Source of the DNA: Octopus bimaculoides
Lineage: Eukaryota
Assembly (NCBI RefSeq): GCF_001194135.2
Contig: NC_068995.1
Coordinates: 2,137,661-2,201,660, forward strand
DNA length: 64,000 bases
Direction of reading: 5' to 3'
A program made the position numbers and the translations under genes. Positions 2,799 through 49,205 of the stretch are shown piece by piece. The notes below the pieces were generated by a model. That model did no database searches and was not told the DNA's origin. It was given only the letters and a program-made list of their open reading frames with translations. How positions within the stretch are numbered: position 1 is the stretch's first letter; every line of letters starts with the position of its first letter.

Positions 2799-3279
2799 NN
2801 NNNNNNNNNNNNNNNNNNNNNNNNNNNNNNNNNNNNNNNNNNNNNNNNNNNNNNNNNNNNNNNNNNNNNNNNNNNNNNNNNNNNNNNNNNNNNNNNNNNN
2901 NNNNNNNNNNNNNNNNNNNNNNNNNNNNNNNNNNNNNNNNNNNNNNNNNNNNNNNNNNNNNNNNNNNNNNNNNNNNNNNNNNNNNNNNNNNNNNNNNNNN
3001 NNNNNNNNNNNNNNNNNNNNNNNNNNNNNNNNNNNNNNNNNNNNNNNNNNNNNNNNNNNNNNNNNNNNNNNNNNNNNNNNNNNNNNNNNNNNNNNNNNNN
3101 NNNNNNNNNNNNNNNNNNNNNNNNNNNNNNNNNNNNNNNNNNNNNNNNNNNNNNNNNNNNNNNNNNNNNNNNNNNNNNNNNNNNNNNNNNNNNNNNNNNN
3201 NNNNNNNNNNNNNNNNNNNNNNNNNNNNNNNNNNNNNNNNNNNNNNNNNNNNNNNNNNNNNNNNNNNNNNNNNNNNNNN

Positions 3280-4337: not shown

Positions 4338-4700
4338 GTTGGGATTGATACATCAATTAGAAGACATTTTTGTTTTTGATGATCTCTGACAACTATATCT
4401 GGTCTATTAGCCTTGATCTTTCTATGTGTGTGTTTTGGCATATCCCAGAGTATAATTGCTTTGTCATTTTATGACAGCTTTCCTGAGGTGTGCCTATGCC
4501 TTTTTTTTTTCTGTTATCATTCCATAGCATTGGCATAGCTTCCAGTGTATATAGGTCCCAATTCTGTCATGTCTGTGAATATATTCCTTTTTAGCCGGGG
4601 CTGGGCAGCCAGAGACAATATGATTTATTGTTTCTTCCCCATCACCACATATTCTGCAGTTACTTATTGTATTTTTCTTAAGTTTCAACACATTTGGTTC
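4338..4700 (-). mobile_element. R4/Dong-clade non-LTR retrotransposon fragment (CCHC knuckle plus restriction-like endonuclease)
   Basis: Minus translation CRICGDGEETINHIVSGCP...KKEYIHRHDRIGTYIHWKLC, then after a frameshift ILWDMP...KIKANRPDIVVRD...CLLIDVSIP (PD-(D/E)xK-type RLE motif). Confidence 0.85.
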
Positions 4701-4759
4701 ATCACAACGACTACACACAGTGAAATGTTGTATTTTGTTGATTTTTGTGAGCCCCACCT

Positions 4760-4968
4760 GACTGGCTCCTGTGCTGGTGGCATGTAAAACGCACTCGATA
4801 CACTCTTGGAGTGGTTGGCATTAGGAAGGGCATCCAGCTGTAGAAACCTTGCCTGATCAGATTGGAGCCTGGTGCAGCCTTCTGGCTCACCAGACCTCAG
4901 TCGAACCGTCCAACCCATGCCAGCATGGAAAGCAGACATTAAACAATAATGATGATGATGATGATGAT
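4760..4968 (+). mobile_element. RTE-type tail element
   Basis: Same tail ending CCAACCCATGCCAGCATGGAAAGCAGACATTAAAC(A/G)AT repeats. Other degraded copies at ~6310-6470(-), 14740-14920(-), 15490-15830(-), 26270-26440(+), 29050-29460, 47420-47610(-), 50430-50570(-), 53390-53600(-) and 61450-61597(+). Confidence 0.8.
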
Positions 4969-6133: not shown

Positions 6134-6524
6134 TACTGGGTGGTCGCTAGAAAAGCTGAAAATTCGTGAAATGCTGATATATGTTTTCACAAGATCTATT
6201 TAAGGTAAACAATAAGCATAAAATTTTCCGCTTTTTTAGCAACCACCATGTATGTATATATATATGTGTGTATGTGTGTGTATTATACACCGTCATGATC
6301 ATGATCATCACCACCGTCATTTACCATTCACTTTCCATAGTGGTATGGGTTGGATTGCTTAACTGGATCTGGTGTACCTCAAGGTTGCATCGGGCTCCAA
6401 TGTCATCTTTCACATGGTTTCTACAGCTGGATGCCATTCCTAATGTCAACCACTTCACACAGTGTAATTATATATGTATATAACAAACAACACTATTTAA
6501 TACAATGACATATATAATATATAT

Positions 6525-6603
<79 letters not shown>

Positions 6604-7340
6604 TGCATACATACATATAAGTTAAGTACATATATATATAAATAAATATATTCATATAGCAATAAGTATATATATATATATATATGTGGGGGGAGGTATG
6701 TGTGTGTGCATATATGCATGTGTATATTGAGTGTGTGTGTGTTTTTATGATTGAGATGTTATTTCTGCAAGGTAAAAAGAAAAAGATAAAACAACACCCC
6801 AAAAAAGACAAGAAACTGTATACACCTACAGAGAGTATCAATGAAATCATTGATTGACGAGAAGTAGCAAATCCCTAATTAATCAATTATATTTGTAATT
6901 TTAGTCCATAGCTTAATTGCTTTCGTTGCTATGTGCACCGCTTGGTTGCTTGGTAAGCATCATAGAATTAGTGTGAGCTGGAAAGTGTGAGAAATAAAAA
7001 TAAAATAAAATATATATATATATATATATATATANNNNNNNNNNNNNNNNNNNNNNNNNNNNNNNNNNNNNNNNNNNNNNNNNNNNNNNNNNNNNNNNNN
7101 NNNNNNNNNNNNNNNNNNNNNNNNATATATGTATATATGCATATAGATATAAATAAATAAGTACAAACCTACCAGATACACTAAACTGACTTGACTATTC
7201 AATAAGCAAGAACTTGTTTTGCCTTCTCACTCAACTACCTGCAATATACCCCACGCACATGTGTGGGATGGAAATGCATAGCTGTGTGTGTGTGTATGCT
7301 CATAAGACACACACACATACATATAAGACATATATATATA

Positions 7341-8371: not shown

Positions 8372-8561
8372 AGGCATGTGGCTTAGCGGCTGGAGTAATC
8401 GGCTCACGATCTTTAGGTCACGGGTTCAATTCCTGACAGTGCATTGTGCCCTTGAGCAAGACAATTTATTTCACATTGCTCCAGTTCACTCTGCTGGCAG
8501 AAATGAGTTGTACCTGTAATTAAAATGGGTCAATCTTGTCATTCTCTTTGTCATGCTGAAT
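8372..8561 (+). mobile_element. tRNA-derived SINE, third family (V/CORE-like TGTGCCCTTGAGCAAGAC segment)
   Basis: A box TGGCTTAGCGG, B box GGGTTCAATTCC, followed by GTGCCCTTGAGCAAGACAATTTATTTCAC. Confidence 0.7.
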
Positions 8562-8930
8562 CATCATCATCATTGTTTAACGTCCGTTTTCCATGCTGGC
8601 ATGCGTTGGTCGGTTTGACTGAGGCTGCACCAGGCTCCAATCTGATCTGGCAAGGTTTCCACAGCTGGATGCTCTTCCTAACACCAACCACTCTGAGAGT
8701 GTAGTGGATACTTTTTACATGCACCGGCATGGGAGCCAGTCAGGTGGCACTGGCATTGACCATATTCAGATGGTGGTTTTTATGTGTCACTGGCACAAGA
8801 GCCACTCAGGTGGGGGACTGGCATTGACATTTTTACATGCCACCAGCACAGGGAGCCAGTCAAGCAGCACTGGCATCGGCCCACGCTTGAATGATACTTA
8901 TTACATGCCACCATTCCCTGTAATTGGGAA
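8562..8930 (-). mobile_element. RTE-type tail element with tandem subrepeats
   Basis: (CAT)n-GTTTAACGTCCGTTTTCCATGCTGGCATG...GGATGCTCTTCCTAACACCAACCAC, then three TTTTACATGCCACC..GAGCCAGTC..CACTGGCAT units. Confidence 0.8.
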
Positions 8931-11658
8931 GCAAACTTCTTACCACTCAGCCACATCCTCACCTATACAAATCCTATAACAATAGATCACCATTGTCCAG
9001 TCTCACAAATCAAGAATCTACAGACAGCTTGTATCGAGTGTCACAAATCTTATAAACTAGTTGATGTCTAATATCTTCTGTCCTCCATCTCACAATGAAT
9101 GTCTATCCTTTTCCATAAAGTAACTGGCACCATCCAGTCCTACAACCACATTCAACATGCTACCCATTATTCCAGCTCTCAGTACCATCGTTTCTAATAA
9201 CCAAGAATCAATACCATTCCATTGTTTAATCTCTTAGAACACTATCGAGCTAATACTCCGTACATTATCACACCAGCAACCTCCATCTTCCTATAATGAT
9301 GGCCTCTAGAAGTGTTATCCCTACTGACAACTGGGCTGTGCCTGGTTCAGCAAGATCCAGTGAATTTAGTCCATATTGGAGAGACTGCTTGCTGGCTACG
9401 GTGATAAAAATCACAAGTTATTATATATTGATCTTATAAACTTCCCCTTCTGTTATCTGTCTTCTATCAGTTCGAGTGAGGTCATTCAGTGAGCTATTTT
9501 ATTGCAGTTTTAACAAGTAAGATAATTGAATCAAGGCTATAATTTCTACCCAGTAAGTTAATCCATGCCAGAGAATTTGGCAGTAATATTCACCATTGTA
9601 TTAACTGTGTGTCACCCACTCTCTCCCTCTCTCTCTCTTTCTTAGAGGGAGAACAATTATTGACTTGTAAAAGGAAGCTGTTGATGTTTATTTCAAACCC
9701 ATCCTATCAATACTTTAATAGATCAATCAATCTATCAATAAAGACACTACGATAAATGAACTAGGAGAGAAGAAGCGAAACACCAGCAAACACACCAAAA
9801 ACAAGCAACTGATAACAATGATGATGATGATATATGATGATGATGATGATGATGATGATGATATATGATGATGATGATGATGATGACGACGATGATGATG
9901 ATGATGACGATGATGATGATGAGGATAAACTAAATAAACATGAACTCTACTTCCAGCTTCCTCTCCCAGTTCGGCAAACTTTGTCTTTTTCTGGCAGCAG
10001 CCGTAATCATAAAGCCATAAATTTGGTTATTTCTCTGTTGGCAGCCATGTTTGTATCTGAAATTTTTCTCCAAAATCTCACATCTAATCATTGTTTGCAA
10101 ACCTTGTGTCACATATTCAGTGTTGAGGGTTAATGGTTATAGTTAAGGTCGGGGGTGAGGTTTTTTTTTGGTGGGGAAGGGTTATAGTTACCGACTGACC
10201 GTGTCACATTCTGTGGGGGGATTATCAGCGTCGTTATTGGCAGAATTGTTTGAACATCAGAGAAAATGCCTTGTGACATTTGTTCTTGCTCCGAGTTCAA
10301 ATCCTATCAAGGTCAAGACTTGCCTTTCATTTTTTTTTTTGTTGTTTTTTTGAGTGTCAATGAAATAAAGTACCAGTTAAGCATGAGACTCAACGGCATC
10401 TACAAACACCCTCCCCTCAAAATAGGTGGCCTTGTAACCTAAATCAGGAACCATTTGCATATAACACCATTTCACTTTATTTATATCAGTGATTGAAAAA
10501 CTGCTGTTGTTGTTGTTGTTGAGTCCCAAGTCAAACCTGGTCCAGCAGACCCATGATCCAAGTCAATCCAGACATGATCATCTCATCTTTCGGTGGTGGT
10601 GGTGGGATGAGTATCTAGGATTGTATTATTCTAATAATTTACCCCCTTTCATTAAGATGGTTGTGTGTGATTTGAAAAAGAGGAAGAGAAAGATTTTGCT
10701 GCTATTTCTAGCAGATGAAACGACCACATAGAGGCACAATCCTAATGGAGAATTAACGAATTAATGTGTAATTGATGCATAATTAAGGAATTAATGAATT
10801 ATGAGTGATATGTCAAACATGTCTCTAGGCCTAAAGAAACATATCTCCCTCGTCAGCTTATCACCATGAAATTGTACAAAGTAGATAAGTGAAACCTAAC
10901 TTCTGGGATGACATGACAAACACCTGTAGGCAACTTTCCCAGATACTTAACTGCCTGACAAAGAGTGGCACATTGAAGTTGGTGGAGGAGCTCAGGTTGT
11001 GTCTGTTCATAAGCTTTTTACGTGACACCAGCACGATTTTATGTGTGTATACATACATACATAAATATATATTTATATTGAGAAAAAAAAGTTGTCAGAA
11101 TTTTGGAAAAAAAACTTTTTGTAATTCTTCATTATTATTAACGCTTTCATTCTTCTCTAGAACTTGTCAAATAAAATTTTGTGAATGTACAAACAACTTG
11201 TTCATTTATACAAAATGGATGGTTTTTTTTGGGGGGGGGGTGTTTAGAAGAGAAACCATTATAATATAGTGGTTGAGTATTCCATAGTCAAGTACTGGTT
11301 AGGCAAGAAAATAAGTTTTTTATTTTGAGATTTCTTTCAAAGACCAATAACTATTGCAGCAGCAACAACAACAACAAACAACAATAATAGCTACAACAAC
11401 AACAGTGGCAGCAGTTGAAGCTGCAGACATACAACTGCGAGATAACCGTGTGTGGCTCTGTATGTTTGGCAGTCAGACTGTGCAGGTTTGTGCTGCTGGC
11501 TGCATGTGTGGCTGTGAGACCAGACCTAATGTCTCTCGTTTCAACACTTTGTGCAGTGTGAGGGACGCATCAGTGATCACACAACGATCAAAGCCAAATC
11601 ATTCCACAGAATAAACTCATTTAACCAATTCTTTCTGCAATCATTTGTTTTCCTGCAG

Positions 11659-11706
11659 CAGGAATGTTCTGGAAGGTGCACAGGTGGGGGCAGAGGAACA
11701 GAAGGA
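11659..11706 (+). CDS. Candidate 48-nt exon upstream of the Zn-finger exon (RNVLEGAQVGAEEQK-E), NAGNAG acceptor
   Basis: Acceptor catttgttttcctgCAGCAG and donor GGA|gtaagt. Length is a multiple of 3 (48 or 45 nt). The phase-2 reading ends in GA, which joins the leading A of exon 22210 to give GAA (Glu) in frame. Confidence 0.5.
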
Positions 11707-12199
11707 GTAAGTTAAAAGCCACACATGCACGTGCAAACACACACACTCACAAACACATTCATACACATGCAGTCACACACACACACATGCACACACTCTC
11801 ACATTCATACACATACTCACACACATGCATGCACACACACACACACATTCACAGACACCTGCACACACTCACACACACATACACACACGTGCACACACAC
11901 ATGTATAAAGTTGGTGAGGGAATAATAATTGGTCAACATGTAGGACCACTGAACCATCTCACAACAACAGCCAACCAAGTGTTTTGTTTAGAATTCCAAT
12001 TTCTAACACTTTTGGAAGAAGATGAGTTACAGTGGCTCTCTAGTCAGAGTGTTGGATTGGTTATATGGGGCATCTACGGTGTTCCACACCAAACTTGTTA
12101 ATGTACAGATGAGTTCTGTTAGTATGTTCAGGTTGTCCATACAACACTGCTGCTGTTGTTTCCTGTTACATATAGCTATACATACATACATACATACAT

Positions 12200-12232
<33 letters not shown>

Positions 12233-12713
12233 NNNNNNNNNNNNNNNNNNNNNNNTGTAGTCTGTCGATTTATAAAATATAATTTCCAGAACTAGACACA
12301 GGACGTCCACCCGAAAGGCAGCACGTGTAGAGTTCTACAAATTACATTCAGTGTATCCTTTCAAATGTCTTCAATCTGGCGCGCTAAGTCCGGAAATAAC
12401 TCTGCAGTTAATAAATTTTTGCAGCTAATTTACCGATTTGAGAACATCATTATTTAAAATTTATTAATAAGAGTAGAAATTGATATTAATCAATTAAAAC
12501 CAGTGGTCTAGCATATTAAAAAAATCCGAAGATTAAAATTATATTACATACAAAAATAAGAGGAATGACCAGCAAAAGTGGACTCCTATATGCTAGAAAT
12601 AGATGCCAAATCATCTAACCACGAAGAATATGTTCTCACTAAAAATTTAGCGACACAACAGACTGCAAAAGGGTAAGACAAATGAAAAAATATTAAATAA
12701 AAAATCGATTAAC

Positions 12714-12778
12714 CTACGTACCATGGTTTCACCTGTTAATATTTACATAAGTAAATATCTGCAGGATCATCAGCGTAG
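12714..12778 (-). ncRNA. Type I hammerhead ribozyme (intact copy)
   Basis: Minus strand reads CUACG-CUGAUGA-U CCUG cag AUAUUUAC UUAU GUAAAUAU uaa CAGG U-GAAA-CCAUGG-UA/CGUAG. Stem I CUACG/CGUAG; extended stem II; palindromic stem III ACCAUGGU; GUA cleavage triplet, predicted cut between 12719 and 12718. Confidence 0.85.
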
Positions 12779-12969
12779 TCTGTCAATTTCTCAAACCGGT
12801 AAATTAGCTGCAAAAATTTATTAACTGCAGAGTTATTTACGGACTTAGCGCGCCAGAGTGAAGACATTTGAAAGGATACACTGAATGTAATTTGTAGAAC
12901 TCTACACGTGCTCCATTGCGGGTGGACGTCTTGTGTCTAGTTCTGGGAATTATTTCTCAAATCGACTGA

Positions 12970-13034
12970 CCACGCTGATGATCCAGCAGATATTTACTTA
13001 TGTAAATTTTAAAAGGTGAAACCATGGTACGTAG
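12970..13034 (+). ncRNA. Type I hammerhead ribozyme (partly decayed copy)
   Basis: CCACG-CUGAUGA(12975-81)-UCCAGCAG AUAUUUAC UUAU GUAAAUUU UAAAAGGU-GAAA(13018-21)-CCAUGG-UA/CGUAG. Core intact; mismatches in stems I and II relative to the minus copy. Confidence 0.75.
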
Positions 13035-13198
13035 GTTAATCGTTTTTCATTTAGTATTCTTTCATTTGTTTTGCCCTTTTACAGTCTGTTGTGTCACTAA
13101 ATTTTTTACTGAGAACATATTTTTTCGTGGTTAGATGATTCGGCATCTATCTCTAGCATATAGGAGTCCACATTTGTTGGTCATCCCTCTTATTTTTG

Positions 13199-13231
<33 letters not shown>

Positions 13232-38546: not shown

Positions 38547-40699
38547 GTGTGTATGTGTCTGTGTGTGTATATACATGCCTATATATATATATTTACACAT
38601 ACATATATATATACATACATTCATACGGGGTATGGATGTGAGGCTGCGAGGGTTAGTGACCATAACATAACGAGGACCTCCCACGCTGCTGGTATTGCAG
38701 TGACCGAGGGTGTCCAATCTGAGTGTGATGAGGCCAATGCCTGCGGGGAAAACGTAGGTGGGGGGGGGAGGAAACTGGGGCAGGGGNNNNNNNNNNCCCT
38801 CCCAATTTCTACCCCCACTTCCTTTCCCGTTTTTGTTTCTATTTCATTTCTGTTAGTTAATACCATGCAACATTAGTATCACCATGCTACTTTTTCTATT
38901 TTATCTTCACCGAAATAATCTATTGTTAATCTTCTTAAATCCAATTGTCAACTATTGAATAAGCTCTGCCATAGCTGCAGTGTAAATCTACTTTACTGGA
39001 TTTAACAAGCTTCTCTAGATGTGGATTAAACGTTGTACAACAGAAATCTGCTTAGTTTGTGGTCAGTCGGTATACCAGCTGTTTGGGATTAACTGTTAAC
39101 AACTGTTTGTTGCTATTATTGCTTATATTTCAGCTTTACTGTACTCAATGGGTACTCCATTGTACTCTTATTGTACTCAACAGCATTTAATGTACTCTAC
39201 TTTCACACAGTGTCACTGTACGCTGCTGTACTTTACTGTGCAATGTCATATTGGTACTCTACTCTTGTGCATGTCACTGTATTATAACTTCGTTGTACAA
39301 TATACCCTTTTTCGGTACTCTGCAGTTAATGTATCTACTACACTACACTCTTACCATACAGTCTGTACTCTATTCTTGCCGTACTCTACTATGTATTAGT
39401 TAATGTGATCCTAGATAATCAGCTATTAACCATGGCTCCCAGGACAATATGTGACCCTCAAGCATCCTCTCAGTGGCCCTTAGTGACCTTCCCTAATTGC
39501 CTTGTGTTTCCCTGGTTTTGGTACAGCCCCCCCCCCCCCAAATCCAGGTTTTGGATCTGACCCAGATATTAAAAAGATTGAGAACCACTGTCCCAGATAC
39601 AGTGCATCAAAGAAAATAGGACAGGATGGTCATGGCTGAAATGCCTTTTGTTGATCATAGGTCTGCTTGATCATCATTAACTTGAGATAATAACAACAAC
39701 AACAACAACACTAGACCACAAGGAATTTTGTTCCATGCTCCAGTAATTCTGACCATCTTTAACCTCAAGTTAGAGTAAAGATGTTCTTGGAGGACATGGT
39801 GAGATGAGAAGTGGAAATGTTGTTGGTTGGGGAATTGAGATGAAGGCAGTTAGGGGAAGATGAACAAGGATTTGTAGATCTAACCAACCCCTGTCATCTT
39901 GTAAAAATATCTGATGGTGGTGATGGTGGAAGTGACGATGGCGACAACAATGATGATGATATTGATGATGTTCATAATGATGATGGCGATGACTGGAGTT
40001 GTGGTGGTGATGAAGATCATGGTGGCAGTAATGATTCCGATAGTTATAATGGTAGAGGTGGTGAAAATGACGATGGCAATCATGATGATGATATTAATGC
40101 TAGTGGTGGTGGTGGCGGTGGTGGTAGTGGCGGTGGTGGTGGTGGTGGTGGTGGAAGTGATAATGATTTTTTTTGTTTTTTGTCAAGCATTATATTTCCC
40201 GTGCTGTGTTTTGTCGGCTGTACATTGGCTGCTACAACATCACACAGTGTGGCTATCCAAGCAGCTATGGCATTGTTGAAATACAATTATATAACACGAA
40301 CAGGGGCACTGAAATAACACTCATTGTCTACACTGTCTAACACCCCCGCACACACCACACACACGTGCATGAGTACATATATATACATCATTATGATGAA
40401 GATGATGCTGATGATGATGATCACCATCATCCTTTAATGTCTTTTTATCATGCTGTCATGGGTTGGATTACTAGCATGGGTTATATATATATATATATAT
40501 ATATNNNNNNNNNNNNNNNNNNNNNNNNNNNNNNNNNNNNNNNNNNNNNNNNNNNNNNNNNNNNNNNNNNNNNNNNNNNNNNNNNNNNNNNNNNNNNNNN
40601 NNNNNNNNNNNNNNNNNNNNNNNNNNNNNNNNNNNNNNNNNNNNNNNNNNNNNNNNNNNNNNNNNNNNNNNNNNNNNNNNNNNNNNNNNNNNNNNNNNN

Positions 40700-42926: not shown

Positions 42927-43010
42927 ATATATATNNNNNNNNNNNNNNNNNNNNNNNNNNNNNNNNNNNNNNNNNNNNATGTGTATGTATATATATATAA
43001 TACACACAGT

Positions 43011-43240
43011 GGCGAGCTGGCAGAAACGTTAGCACGCCGGGCAAAATGCTTAGCGGTATTTCGTCTGCCGCTACGTTCTGAGTTCAAATTCCGCCGAGGT
43101 CGACTTTGCCTTTCATCCTTTCGGGGTCGATTAAATAAGTACCAGTTACGAACTGGGGTCGATATAATTGACTTAATCCGTTTGTCTGTCCTTGTTTGTC
43201 CCCTCTGTGTTTAGCCCTTTGTGGGTAGTAAAGAAATAAC
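43011..43240 (+). mobile_element. tRNA-derived SINE, second family (Meta/Sauria-like central domain as recalled)
   Basis: GGCGAGCTGGCAGAAACGTTAGC (A box)...GAGTTCAAATTCC (B box)...GACTTTGCCTTTCATCCTTTCGGGGTCGATTAAATAAGTACCAG. Confidence 0.85.
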
Positions 43241-44493: not shown

Positions 44494-44966
44494 TCATTTC
44501 GATGACTGGCATCCGTGTAGTGGTGCACTCAGAGCACCATCCGAGCGTGATTGTTGCCAGAGCAGCTGACTGGCTTCCATGCCGGTGGCACGTAAAAAGC
44601 ACCATTCAAGTGTGATCGTTACCAGTATCGCCTTACTGGCACTTGTGCCGGTGGAACGTGAAAAAACATTCAAGTGAGGTTGTTGACAGTGCCGCTGGAC
44701 TGGCTCCTGTGCAGGTGGCACGTAAAAATCACCATTTGAGCATGGCCATTGCCAGTACTGCTTGACTGGCCCTCATTCCAGTGGCACATAAAATCACCCA
44801 CTACACTCTTGGAGGGGTTGGTGTTAGGAAGGGCATCCAGCTGTAGAAACTCTGCCAGATCAGATTGGAGCCTGGTGCAGCCATCTGGTTCGCCAGTCTT
44901 CAGTCAAATCGTCCAACCCATGCTAGCATGGAAAGCAGACATTAAACGACGACGATGATGATGATG
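44494..44966 (+). mobile_element. RTE-type 3' UTR/tail element with ~60-65 bp internal tandem subrepeats
   Basis: About four units of GTGGCACGTAAAAxCACCATT..CAGT..CTGGC, then CACTACACTC...AGGAAGGGCATCCAGCTGTAGAAAC...CCAACCCATGCTAGCATGGAAAGCAGACATTAAAC(GAC/GAT)n; same tail as 33969-34590. Confidence 0.8.
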
Positions 44967-44984
44967 ATATATATATATATGTGT

Positions 44985-48173: not shown

Positions 48174-48318
48174 NNNNNNNNNNNNNNNNNNNNNNNNNNN
48201 NNNNNNNNNNNNNNNNNNNNNNNNNNNNNNNNNNNNNNNNNNNNNNNNNNNNNNNNNNNNNNNNNNNNNNNNNNNNNNNNNNNNNNNNNNNNNNNNNNNN
48301 NNNNNNNNNNNNNATATA

Positions 48319-48361
<43 letters not shown>

Positions 48362-48767
48362 GTGTGTGTATATATATATCATATATATATATATATATAT
48401 GCATATATGTATGTATATATATATAATTATAGATGCATACATGATGATGAATGTGTGAATGTATATAAATCAGTAATTATTTTCTAATGAGGGTTAATTA
48501 AAATCAATTTTTGTATCATTTGGGAATAATAATAGCAGTAGAAACATGAGACTAACTGCAACAACTGCCTCCATTTTGCATAATAGTAATAAAAATAATC
48601 ATCACCATCACCACCACCATCACTGCCAACACCATCACCATTACGATCATGATTAGTTTGGCAGCATTAATAGCACATCAGAGAAAATACTTTGCTGTAT
48701 TTAGTTGCCCTTATATGCTTTCTGATTTCAAATTCCACCATGGTCAACTCTGCCTTTTTCTCCTTCT

Positions 48768-49205
48768 GTGTGTATTGGCATATCTCATAGAATGGTTGCT
48801 TTCTCATTTTCTGTGACCTTTTCTGGTGTGTGCCTATACCACCTTTTTTCTTTTGTTATTCCACAGTGTTGGCATAGCTTTCAATGTATGTAGGTCCCAG
48901 CTCTGTCGTGTCTGTGAATATATTGCTTCTTAGCCAGAATTGGGCAACCAGAGACAATAAGATTTATTGTTTCTTGACCATCTCCACATATTCTGCAGTT
49001 ACTTATTGTATTTTTTTTTCCATTACATATTTTTGGTCATTTCTGGTGAGAAGGCTCTGGTCTTGTGCTGCAATTAAAAATCTTTCAGTCTCTGCTATGA
49101 GTCCTGAGCTTCTCAACCATTGCTGGGATTTTGCTTTGTCCATTTCTTTTTTGTTTAACCCAGTATTTGCTGTGAAAGGGCTTTTCTGGCCATCTTGCGA
49201 TATAA
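48768..49205 (-). mobile_element. Second R4/Dong-clade fragment
   Basis: Minus translation DKAKSQQWLRSSGLIAETERFLIAAQDQSLLTRN...CRICGDGQETINLIVSGCPILAKKQYIHRHDRAGTYIH...RWYRHTPEKVTENEKAT; clearly homologous to 4338-4700. Confidence 0.85.

What the first reader, a model, noticed from the sequence alone, without database searches (positions are those of the whole stretch)
12256..13200. Hammerhead-ribozyme retroelement (retrozyme/pLTR-like) with a 518-nt unit and a head-to-head inversion inside an intron
Seen: two copies of a non-coding unit point away from each other from a junction at ~12786. On the - strand it reads HHR-B-spacer-A and then the start of another HHR (GACAGACTACA) that runs into the gap, giving a 518-nt period. 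On the + strand it reads A-HHR-B. Both ends sit in (TA)n, and no ORF was found. Established: Penelope-like elements carry type I hammerheads in pLTRs that occur in tandem or inverted arrangement, and non-LTR retrozymes are tandem non-coding HHR repeats that yield circular RNAs. Inference: this is a non-autonomous, TA-targeting, ribozyme-delimited retroelement whose monomer (~518 nt) is longer than the metazoan retrozyme monomers I recall. The inversion resembles twin priming or a 5' inversion. I cannot tell whether this family is already described in octopus.
Basis: partly seen in the sequence, partly recalled or inferred. Interest (0 to 1): 0.88.

Follow-up and report, generated by a model that had tools for sequence, protein, structure and literature searches.

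The report
Decayed hammerhead-carrying Penelope-type repeat insertion
This is an old, non-coding mobile-element insertion in a TA microsatellite that carries a hammerhead-ribozyme motif and has the tandem-plus-inverted layout typical of Penelope-like retroelements and their "retrozyme" derivatives, so it is an ordinary member of a known kind.

Summary
On the minus strand, 12795->12256 reads HHR-B-spacer-A plus 21 nt of a second unit, giving a 518-nt period. On the plus strand, 12788-13198 reads A-HHR-B. The two copies meet 5'-to-5' at 12786-12790, differ by 7.5% and are flanked by (TA)n. No frame is open for more than 53 codons.

The left copy has a complete type-I hammerhead: CUGAUGA, GAAA, GUA|C, three helices and a palindromic helix III (ACCAUGGU) that predicts a dimeric ribozyme. 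A relaxed descriptor finds it once in the window, against 0.01 hits expected. The right copy's ribozyme has decayed. No Rfam hammerhead model matches, and the 10.1/11.1 position is atypical (U.U).

The layout matches published Penelope-like element (PLE) insertions: partial tandem, inverted 5'-truncated copy, AT/(TA)n target, both strands primed. It also fits non-LTR retrozymes, now regarded as non-autonomous PLE derivatives.

The 518-nt size is not unusual (published range 51-972 bp). The intron location is unverified. TA-targeting rests on one locus.

I could not obtain copy number, HHR covariation, expression or circular RNA.

Verdict: real feature, new member of a known kind, low-to-moderate interest.

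The parts
12178..12232 (.). Left flank: compound microsatellite (ATAC)n then (TA)n, the presumed target site
   Evidence: TRF; sequence
12233..12255 (.). Assembly gap (23 N) that hides the 3' end of the left copy. Its true size is unknown.
   Evidence: Six of the 19 gaps directly abut a (TA)>=6 array on their left side, this one included, and others have an array on their right side.
12256..12277 (-). Start of a second unit: the 5' strand of helix I of a second hammerhead (..AAAUCGACAGACUAC). This closes the 518-nt period.
   Evidence: Direct repeat D3, spacing 518; alignment
12279..12444 (-). Segment A of the left copy
   Evidence: Inverted repeat I1 (166 nt, 95%)
12445..12544 (-). AT-rich spacer, present only in the left copy. 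The right copy ends where it would begin.
12545..12699 (-). Segment B of the left copy
   Evidence: Inverted repeats I3 and I4
12700..12790 (-). Intact type-I hammerhead motif. Helix I is CUACG (12778-12774) paired with CGUAG (12718-12714), plus an extension. CUGAUGA lies at 12773-12767. Helix II is CCUG (12765-12762) paired with CAGG (12735-12732) and is extended by a hairpin at 12758-12739. GAAA lies at 12730-12727. The helix III palindrome ACCAUGGU lies at 12727-12720. The predicted cut is after A12719 (GUA|C).
   Evidence: Coordinates; fold z=-4.4; descriptor 1 hit against 0.01 expected; dimer cofold
12786..12790 (.). Head-to-head (5'-to-5') junction of the two copies, with 2-4 nt of overlap and no microsatellite between them
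12788..12953 (+). Segment A of the right copy. Its 5' end is truncated at the junction.
12959..13047 (+). Decayed hammerhead of the right copy. The core is kept (CUGAUGA 12975-12981, GAAAC 13018-13022, and the cut would fall at 13029|13030). Helix I has a mismatch (CCACG) and helix II is reduced to 2 bp.
   Evidence: fold z=-0.9; fails the descriptor
13048..13198 (+). Segment B of the right copy. It ends in UA-rich element sequence (..UUUUUGUAU) that merges into the (TA)n flank about 168 nt 3' of the cut site.
13199..13224 (.). Right flank: (TA)13
   Evidence: TRF

Best explanation
The locus is one old insertion of a non-autonomous, non-coding retroelement derived from, and presumably mobilised by, a Penelope-like element (PLE). 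Such elements are currently called non-LTR retrozymes.

Shown by the sequence:
- A 518-nt unit with the order A, hammerhead, B, spacer.
- Slightly more than one unit on the minus strand, and a 5'-truncated partial unit on the plus strand.
- The two copies are joined 5'-to-5', and their 3' ends point outward into a split (TA)n microsatellite.
- A structurally complete type-I hammerhead sits in the left copy. Its very short, palindromic helix III predicts activity as a dimer between neighbouring units.

Inferred from published work on PLEs and retrozymes:
1. A master array is transcribed into RNA longer than one unit.
2. The hammerhead may cut it at GUA|C into 518-nt monomers, which a host RNA ligase can circularise.
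3. A PLE RT/GIY-YIG protein nicks AT-rich or (TA)n DNA on both strands. It primes reverse transcription on a circular or multimeric template from each nick.
4. The two cDNAs are joined in the middle. This yields the tandem-plus-inverted structure.

Since insertion the two arms have diverged by about 7.5% and the right-hand ribozyme has lost helix pairing. This particular copy is therefore a fossil.
For: Anatomy:
- The arms are circular permutations of one unit.
- There is no coding capacity.

Hammerhead:
- The left copy carries every core element and three helices. A relaxed descriptor finds it once in the window, against 0.01 hits expected per simulated window.
- Its fold z-score is -4.4.
- Cofolding two copies gives the double hammerhead with an intermolecular 8-bp ACCAUGGU helix III, at -57.6 against 2 x -23.8 kcal/mol.

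Monomer properties:
- The circular 518-nt monomer is strongly self-paired (z=-6.3) and 32% GC, as described for metazoan retrozyme RNAs (PMC7761336).

Flanks:
- (TA)n on both sides.

Literature match:
- PLE insertions are partial tandems with an inverted 5'-truncated copy, and (TA)n is a preferred target (PMC8557442).
- Metazoan type-I and PLE hammerheads have a short palindromic helix III, an extra nucleotide after A9, and dimeric action. Pairs of such motifs 100-700 bp apart on opposite strands are already described (PMC4209133).
- A PLE protein cleaves and extends both strands at AT-rich DNA, and reverse transcription starts internally, 3' of the hammerhead (PMC11167929).
- Retrozymes are non-autonomous PLE derivatives with consensus lengths of 51-972 bp.
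- PLEs are present in cephalopod genomes, if the organism is indeed one.
Against: - Only this one locus is available, so nothing shows a multi-copy family or any other insertion site.
- No Rfam hammerhead model reports the motif, even at E<=10 on 111 nt.
- The conserved G10.1-C11.1 pair is replaced by U.U, or by C-G flanked by two extra U. Catalytic competence is therefore uncertain.
- The two copies show no compensatory changes. The ribozyme region (about 5-7% different) is no better conserved than the rest (7.5%).
- The second unit is represented by only 21 nt before an assembly gap.
- No PLE ORF was seen near the element among long open frames in the window. This was a visual check, not a profile search.
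Confidence: 0.65

Rival explanations
1. A one-off remnant of an autonomous PLE rather than a dedicated non-autonomous family. In this view A-HHR-B is the pseudo-LTR region of a full PLE, and the 518-nt unit arose by internal deletion of the ORF at this locus or in its immediate source copy.
For: - Hammerheads lie in PLE pseudo-LTRs, and most genomic min-HHRs are single motifs from truncated PLEs.
- In the anole PLE the ORF start overlaps the hammerhead. Here the helix III palindrome ACCAUGG contains a Kozak-like ATG that opens only a 25- or 36-codon frame. This could be a relic of an ORF start.
Against: - The left copy closes the unit (HHR-B-spacer-A-HHR') within 518 nt with no ORF remnant.
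- The right copy independently shows the same A->HHR join. The ORF-less tandem unit therefore already existed in the template.
- An ORF-less derivative that was copied is, by definition, a non-autonomous element.
Confidence: 0.15
2. A local, non-mobile tandem and inverted duplication next to a microsatellite, for example from replication template switching, in which a hammerhead-like motif occurs by chance.
For: - There is a single locus in 64 kb.
- No Rfam hit, atypical 10.1/11.1 positions, and no covariation between the copies.
- Scaling the descriptor's chance rate of 0.01 per 58 kb gives hundreds of chance motifs in a gigabase-sized genome (my extrapolation).
Against: - The descriptor did not require the 8-nt palindromic helix III, the 8-bp extension of helix I or the hairpin-extended helix II. 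All three are present.
- A hammerhead, a permuted tandem unit, an inverted 5'-truncated copy and (TA)n on both sides together reproduce a specific published insertion signature.
Confidence: 0.08
3. The head-to-head inversion is an assembly artefact: two separate copies of the repeat were wrongly joined at 12786-12790 in a gap-rich draft assembly.
For: - The window has 19 N gaps.
- It contains at least one gap-flank duplication artefact, 33427-33549 = 33969-34091 at 100%.
- Published work notes that complex PLE insertions cause problems in short-read assemblies.
Against: - The arms differ by 7.5%, so they are two distinct genomic sequences, not one read set used twice.
- The junction lies inside a contig, not at a gap.
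- Inverted 5'-truncated copies are a documented natural feature of PLE insertions.
Confidence: 0.07

Closest known systems
Metazoan non-LTR retrozymes (Cervera & de la Pena 2020, PMC7229834; Li, Clavereau & Pollet 2026 preprint, 10.64898/2026.07.22.740005)
   Same: - Non-coding, AT-rich tandem unit with one type-I hammerhead per unit.
- Weak, palindromic helix III that favours dimeric cleavage.
- Strongly self-paired monomer.
- Unit length within the published 51-972 bp range.
   Different: - Only about 1.04 units plus an inverted partial unit are seen here, not an array.
- Copy number and circular RNA are unknown.
- The 10.1/11.1 positions are U.U rather than G-C.
- Loop 2 is replaced by an internal loop plus a 9-bp hairpin.
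- I found no description of such elements in cephalopods in the held literature.
Pseudo-LTRs and min-HHRs of Penelope-like elements (Cervera & de la Pena 2014, PMC4209133; Craig et al. 2021, PMC8557442; Frangieh et al. 2024, PMC11167929)
   Same: - Partial tandem plus an inverted 5'-truncated copy.
- Hammerhead about 100-170 nt upstream of the 3' end of the inserted copy.
- Extra nucleotide after A9 and palindromic 15.2-16.2/loop 3.
- AT-rich or (TA)n target.
- Two hammerheads a few hundred bp apart on opposite strands.
   Different: - No RT/GIY-YIG ORF.
- The tandem unit is 518 nt rather than 3-4 kb.
- The G10.1-C11.1 pair reported as highly conserved in PLE min-HHRs is absent.
- The 30-40-bp 'tail' was not identified.
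Newt satellite 2, Schistosoma Sm-alpha and cave-cricket pDo500 hammerhead repeats (classical type-I HHR repeats; from my own knowledge and as cited in PMC4209133)
   Same: Tandem non-coding repeats of a few hundred nt that carry a type-I hammerhead acting as a double hammerhead through an extended helix III.
   Different: Those are abundant families with demonstrated self-cleavage and match Rfam models. This is a single decayed locus with no Rfam match.
L1 twin priming / 5' inversion
   Same: Two inverted segments of one element joined 5'-to-5' with microhomology, with the 3' ends at the two sides of the target.
   Different: - No poly(A) tail and no recognisable target-site duplication.
- The element is ribozyme-bearing and tandemly permuted.
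- For PLEs, priming on both strands is an intrinsic property of the element's protein.

Membership tests
Hammerhead ribozyme, type I | Catalytic core CUGANGA ... GAAA, with the cleavage triplet NUH after A15.1-U16.1 | tested here: met
   Both copies keep CUGAUGA, GAAAC and GUA|C. Left: 12773-12767, 12730-12726, cut after 12719. Right: 12975-12981, 13018-13022, cut at 13029|13030.
Hammerhead ribozyme, type I | Three helices around the core, with helix I open | tested here: met
   Left copy: helix I 5 bp plus an extension, helix II 4 bp plus a hairpin, helix III 2-4 bp. The descriptor gives 1 hit against 0.01 expected and the fold z-score is -4.4. The right copy fails: helix I has a mismatch and helix II has 2 bp.
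Hammerhead ribozyme, type I | Conserved G10.1-C11.1 pair closing helix II | tested here: not met
   Both copies read CUGAUGA-U-CC(U/A)G...(C/A)AGG-U-GAAA. This gives U.U at 10.1/11.1, or C-G with an extra U on each side.
Hammerhead ribozyme, type I | Match to the Rfam hammerhead covariance models | tested here: not met
   No hit at gathering on the window. No hammerhead hit at E<=10 on 1.25 kb or on 111 nt. PLE-type minimal hammerheads were found with RNAmotif descriptors in the published work. The failed Rfam match therefore lowers the claim but does not exclude it.
Hammerhead ribozyme, type I | Helices supported by covariation among copies | tested here: inconclusive
   Only two copies are available. 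Six differences fall in the ribozyme region, none compensatory and none in the core boxes.
Hammerhead ribozyme, type I | Self-cleavage at the predicted site | not testable with these tools
   Needs in vitro transcription or read ends.
Dimeric metazoan / PLE-type hammerhead (Cervera & de la Pena 2014) | Helix III of 1-2 bp capped by a small palindromic loop, allowing a double hammerhead | tested here: met
   ACCAUGGU is an 8-nt palindrome. RNAcofold of two copies forms the intermolecular helix III and gains about 10 kcal/mol over two monomers.
Dimeric metazoan / PLE-type hammerhead (Cervera & de la Pena 2014) | Extra nucleotide between A9 and 10.1 | tested here: met
   A U follows CUGAUGA in both copies. 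The feature is as listed.
Non-LTR retrozyme | Non-coding unit repeated head-to-tail, with one hammerhead per unit | tested here: inconclusive
   The unit closes on itself: the 518-nt period rests on 21 nt of a second unit and on the A->HHR join in both copies. No ORF exceeds 53 codons. Only about 1.04 units are visible before a gap.
Non-LTR retrozyme | Low GC and a stable, highly self-paired monomer RNA | tested here: met
   32% GC. Circular MFE -131.4 kcal/mol, z=-6.3 against dinucleotide shuffles.
Non-LTR retrozyme | Multi-copy dispersed family in the genome | not testable with these tools
   No other copy in the window. No relatives in metagenome or prokaryote-genome contigs, or among predicted proteins. 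The source genome itself is not searchable here.
Non-LTR retrozyme | Expression as linear and circular monomer RNA | not testable with these tools
Autonomous Penelope-like element | Single ORF encoding RT plus a GIY-YIG endonuclease | tested here: not met
   No frame longer than 53 codons in the unit. No RT-like long frame was noticed in the flanks. Flank frames 11625-12098 and others gave no Pfam hit.
Autonomous Penelope-like element | Insertion architecture: partial tandem (pseudo-LTR), inverted 5'-truncated copy, AT-rich or (TA)n target | tested here: met
   compared with the descriptions.
Autonomous Penelope-like element | [quoted passage not shown] | not tested
   Recognising a tail needs a family consensus. 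The left end is also hidden by the gap.

The most novel reading that the evidence does not exclude
The unit represents a still-undescribed cephalopod retrozyme family with three properties. It produces circular RNAs of about 518 nt. Its hammerhead works despite a non-canonical 10.1/11.1 position and a hairpin-extended loop 2. It is mobilised into (TA)n microsatellites by a Neptune- or Poseidon-type PLE. If so, this would extend ribozyme-delimited circular RNAs to cephalopods and add a natural core variant of the hammerhead.
Probability: 0.2. Interest if true: 0.5.

Novelty: new member of a known kind. Interest (0 to 1): 0.27.

Why it matters
This locus alone matters little. Hammerhead-bearing PLE derivatives occur in thousands of copies in many animal genomes, and the tandem/inverted, TA-flanked layout is their textbook signature.

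It would gain some value under two conditions:
- Genome-wide analysis shows an active family in a cephalopod, a lineage in which I found no published description of hammerhead elements.
- The U.U 10.1/11.1 variant proves to be catalytically competent.

For annotation, the practical points are these. The region should be masked as a PLE-type non-autonomous repeat. The nearby 23-N gap and the inversion should be checked with long reads.

Tried and rejected
1. Rfam scans of the whole window at gathering, and of 1.25 kb and 111 nt at E<=10, gave no hammerhead. The only hits were microsatellite-driven miRNA false positives.
No read-level test of the junction, the gap, expression, cleavage ends or back-splice junctions was therefore possible. 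I did not guess run accessions for read laying.
3. The metagenome scan with CTGATGATCCN{20,40}GGTGAAACCATGGTAC gave 0 hits. The scan with GAAACCATGGTACGTAGG gave 3 hits, all chance matches: two in GC-rich contigs that look bacterial, and one with no CUGAUGA upstream. The prokaryote genome-contig scan gave 0 hits.
4. I concatenated all long stop-to-stop frames of the unit into a pseudo-protein, hoping to fish spurious ORFs of other copies out of the 5.8-billion-protein collection. Nothing scored at E<=0.001.
5. Sensitive nhmmer and blastn searches of the unit against the window found no further copies. A 38-nt match at 18073-18110 looks like chance.
I did not paste the X-masked frames, so the absence of a PLE ORF in the window rests on inspection of open frames only.
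7. A simple palindrome, foldback or MITE reading was rejected because the arms are permuted, not mirrored.
8. The core-only match at 36175 was rejected because it has no helices.
9. Lunse et al. 2017 (PMC5785218) is not held in the library.

Full report
OBSERVATION

The described anatomy is in the sequence. Repeat finding gives four inverted-repeat blocks and one direct repeat:
- 12279-12444 with 12788-12953 (166 nt, 95%)
- 12701-12789 with 12959-13047
- 12641-12704 with 13043-13106
- 12545-12628 with 13121-13204
- 12257-12277 with 12775-12795, a 21-nt direct repeat spaced 518 nt

Read as RNA sense, the left copy (minus strand, 12795->12256) is HHR, B, a 100-nt AT-rich spacer, A, and then the first 21 nt of a second HHR region before a 23-N gap. 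The right copy (plus strand, 12788-13198) is A, HHR, B.

BLAST and MAFFT alignments confirm this. Over 415 aligned positions there are 31 mismatches (19 transitions, 12 transversions) and 5 gap columns, giving p=0.075 and JC=0.079.

The arms are not mirror images about the junction. They are circular permutations of one 518-nt unit. That excludes a simple palindrome, foldback or MITE. It also means the template of the left copy was longer than one unit. The A->HHR join is seen independently in both copies, so the period does not rest only on the 21 nt next to the gap.

A unit dimer has no stop-to-stop frame longer than 53 codons on either strand. No other copy exists in the 64 kb.

The flanks are (ATAC)n/(TA)n at 12178-12232, followed by the gap, and (TA)13 at 13199-13224. 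(TA)>=6 arrays occupy about 3% of the window. Two ends both abutting one by chance would occur about once in a thousand.

THE HAMMERHEAD

The left copy reads 5'-..GACAGACUACG CUGAUGA U CCUG CAG AUAUUUAC UUAU GUAAAUAU UAA CAGG U GAAA CC AU GG UA|C GUAGGUUAAUCG..-3' (coordinates).

What supports it:
- It has the CUGAUGA and GAAA boxes and a GUA cleavage triplet.
- Helix I is CUACG/CGUAG, extended by a further 3 and 8 bp across a bulge and an internal loop.
- Helix II is 4 bp, continued by an internal loop and a 9-bp hairpin.
- Helix III is the 8-nt palindrome ACCAUGGU.
- The 101-nt segment folds this way, with z=-4.4 against dinucleotide shuffles.
- I wrote a deliberately relaxed descriptor: CUGANGA; helix II of at least 4 bp with up to one unpaired nucleotide at each end; GAAA; helix III of at least 2 bp; H17; helix I of at least 4 bp. 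It hits the window exactly once, here. It hits first-order Markov simulations of the window 0.01 times on average.
- Cofolding two copies gives the classical double hammerhead with an intermolecular 8-bp helix III, at -57.6 against 2 x -23.8 kcal/mol.

This is the architecture described for most metazoan type-I and PLE hammerheads: a short helix III with a palindromic loop, an extra nucleotide after A9, and action as dimers (PMC4209133).

What counts against it:
- No Rfam hammerhead model reports it, even at E<=10 on 111 nt.
- The G10.1-C11.1 pair, reported as highly conserved even in minimal PLE hammerheads, is replaced by U.U, or by C-G with an extra U on each side.
- The right copy keeps the core boxes but has a helix I mismatch and only 2 bp of helix II. 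It fails the descriptor and folds no better than shuffles (z=-0.9).
- The six differences between the two ribozyme regions are not compensatory. The ribozyme is no better conserved than the rest of the unit.

I conclude that the motif is a genuine hammerhead-derived sequence (my estimate is about 0.85). Whether even the left copy still cleaves is open.

WHAT IT IS

The combination of features matches published descriptions closely.
- Craig et al. 2021 describe PLE insertions as partial tandems forming pseudo-LTRs. They often have an inverted 5'-truncated copy upstream, hammerheads in the pseudo-LTRs, and (TA)n as a preferred target of some clades.
- Cervera and de la Pena 2014 already noted pairs of minimal hammerheads 100-700 bp apart on opposite strands. 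Here the two CUGAUGA boxes are about 200 bp apart on opposite strands.
- Frangieh et al. 2024 showed that a purified PLE protein cleaves AT-rich DNA and extends both strands. Reverse transcription starts internally, about 90 nt 3' of the hammerhead cut site. In the right copy the 3' end lies about 168 nt 3' of the cut site, in UA-rich element sequence that merges into the (TA)n flank.
- Priming on both strands gives a direct mechanistic reading of the 5'-to-5' junction, which has 2-4 nt of overlap and no microsatellite between the copies.

Because the unit is ORF-less and closes on itself in 518 nt, the element is not an autonomous PLE. It is a non-autonomous derivative. Tandem, non-coding, AT-rich units with one type-I hammerhead each are what de la Pena's group named non-LTR retrozymes. 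A 2026 preprint argues these are non-autonomous PLE sequences and reports consensus lengths of 51-972 bp.

The circular 518-nt monomer is predicted to be strongly self-paired (z=-6.3) and is 32% GC. Both properties are reported for retrozyme RNAs.

MECHANISM

Shown by the sequence: the anatomy, the ribozyme motif and the flanks.

Inferred from published work:
1. RNA longer than one unit is transcribed from a master array.
2. Dimeric hammerhead cleavage at GUA|C may follow, with ligation to a circle.
3. A PLE RT/endonuclease carries out target-primed reverse transcription from nicks on both strands of a (TA)n tract.
4. The two cDNAs are joined.

The anole PLE work shows that hammerhead cleavage is not needed for insertion in vitro. 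A multimeric linear template is therefore as compatible with this locus as a circle.

The 7.5% divergence of the arms and the decayed right ribozyme make this copy a fossil. If the organism is an octopus, the published calibration of JC 0.09 at about 25 My for copy-to-consensus distance would place the insertion very roughly in the 10-15 My range. That is an extrapolation, not a measurement.

- The 518-nt size is not unusual.
- 'Inside an intron' is unverified. The nearest coding evidence is a zf-piccolo exon at 22208-22429. It belongs to a 106-aa gene model whose first exon maps to 20700, 7.5 kb downstream of the element. Upstream exons of a larger gene may exist, but I could not show any.
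- TA-targeting is a one-locus inference, although it agrees with the literature.
- The organism was not verified by any tool.

LIMITS

- None of the searchable collections contains the source genome. Two metagenome scans, a prokaryote-genome scan and a pseudo-protein search found no relatives.
- Copy number, other insertion sites and covariation therefore remain unknown, and these are the decisive data.
- The gap at 12233-12255 may hide more of the left copy. However, many gaps in this assembly sit directly beside a (TA)n array. It may simply be unspanned microsatellite.
- The draft assembly has at least one gap-flank duplication artefact. The 7.5% divergence of the arms nevertheless argues that the inversion is not one sequence used twice.

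NOVELTY AND SCORE

The held literature has no description of hammerhead or retrozyme elements in cephalopods. PLEs are reported there. The locus is best filed as a new member of a known kind. It is a correct and careful observation of an ordinary class of repeat, with two small oddities: U.U at 10.1/11.1 and a hairpin-extended loop 2. Interest is 0.27.

Noticed in passing
window gaps, e.g. 2799-3279, 7035-7124, 12233-12255, 24671-24788, 40505-40699, 48174-48313: Many of the 19 N gaps sit directly beside a (TA)n array. Six have one on their left side, and others have one on their right. The assembler seems to break in TA microsatellites, so gap sizes there are unreliable.
   Followed up: partly
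33427-33549 and 33969-34091: A 123-bp stretch is 100% identical on both sides of gap 33550-33968. This looks like a scaffolding or gap-flank duplication artefact.
   Followed up: no
4754-4968, 6331-6466, 8560-8747, 26269-26416, 33433-33546, 33975-34169, 44698-44968, 53366-53538: A SINE-like repeat family of about 200 bp, with at least 8 copies at 77-88% identity on both strands.
   Followed up: partly
19028-19263, 32044-32230, 36538-36658, 42984-43235: A second interspersed repeat family, 78-89% identical, unclassified.
   Followed up: no
4497-4820 (-) and 4427-4676 ~ 48767-49015: A fragment of a LINE with a weak zf-RVT match (E=0.0013, below the Pfam cut-off), plus a second copy of its tail at 83% identity. 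Another frame elsewhere in the window carries an RLRWYGHV...GRGRPRKT-type LINE C-terminal motif.
   Followed up: partly
20700-20798 and 22208-22429 (+): Two exons of a 106-aa gene model (99% identical to P0001). The second exon encodes a Piccolo-type zinc finger (PF05715, E=7e-6, just below the cut-off). A 75% identical relative exists in a Logan assembly (P0002). The first exon is low-complexity and doubtful.
   Followed up: partly
11658-11707 (+): A possible micro-exon: a ttttcctgcag acceptor, then about 50 nt, then a GGAG|gtaagt donor. It lies just upstream of the element. There is no homology support.
   Followed up: no
12727-12720 (-) and 13021-13028 (+): The helix III palindrome ACCAUGG is also a Kozak-like start. 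It opens only 25 codons (left) or 36 codons (right). In the anole PLE the ORF start overlaps the hammerhead, so segment B might be a relic of a PLE ORF 5' end.
   Followed up: no
36175-36206 (+): CTGATGAG...GGAAACATGTC matches the hammerhead core boxes only. It has no helices and is rejected by the descriptor, so it is a chance match.
   Followed up: yes
unit-internal: 12433-12443 (-) / 12788-12798 (+), and 12955-12965 (+): An 11-nt motif TTCTCAAA(T/C)CG occurs at the start of segment A and again, in the right copy, just before the hammerhead. The inversion junction falls exactly at one of these, so short internal homology may have guided the join.
   Followed up: no
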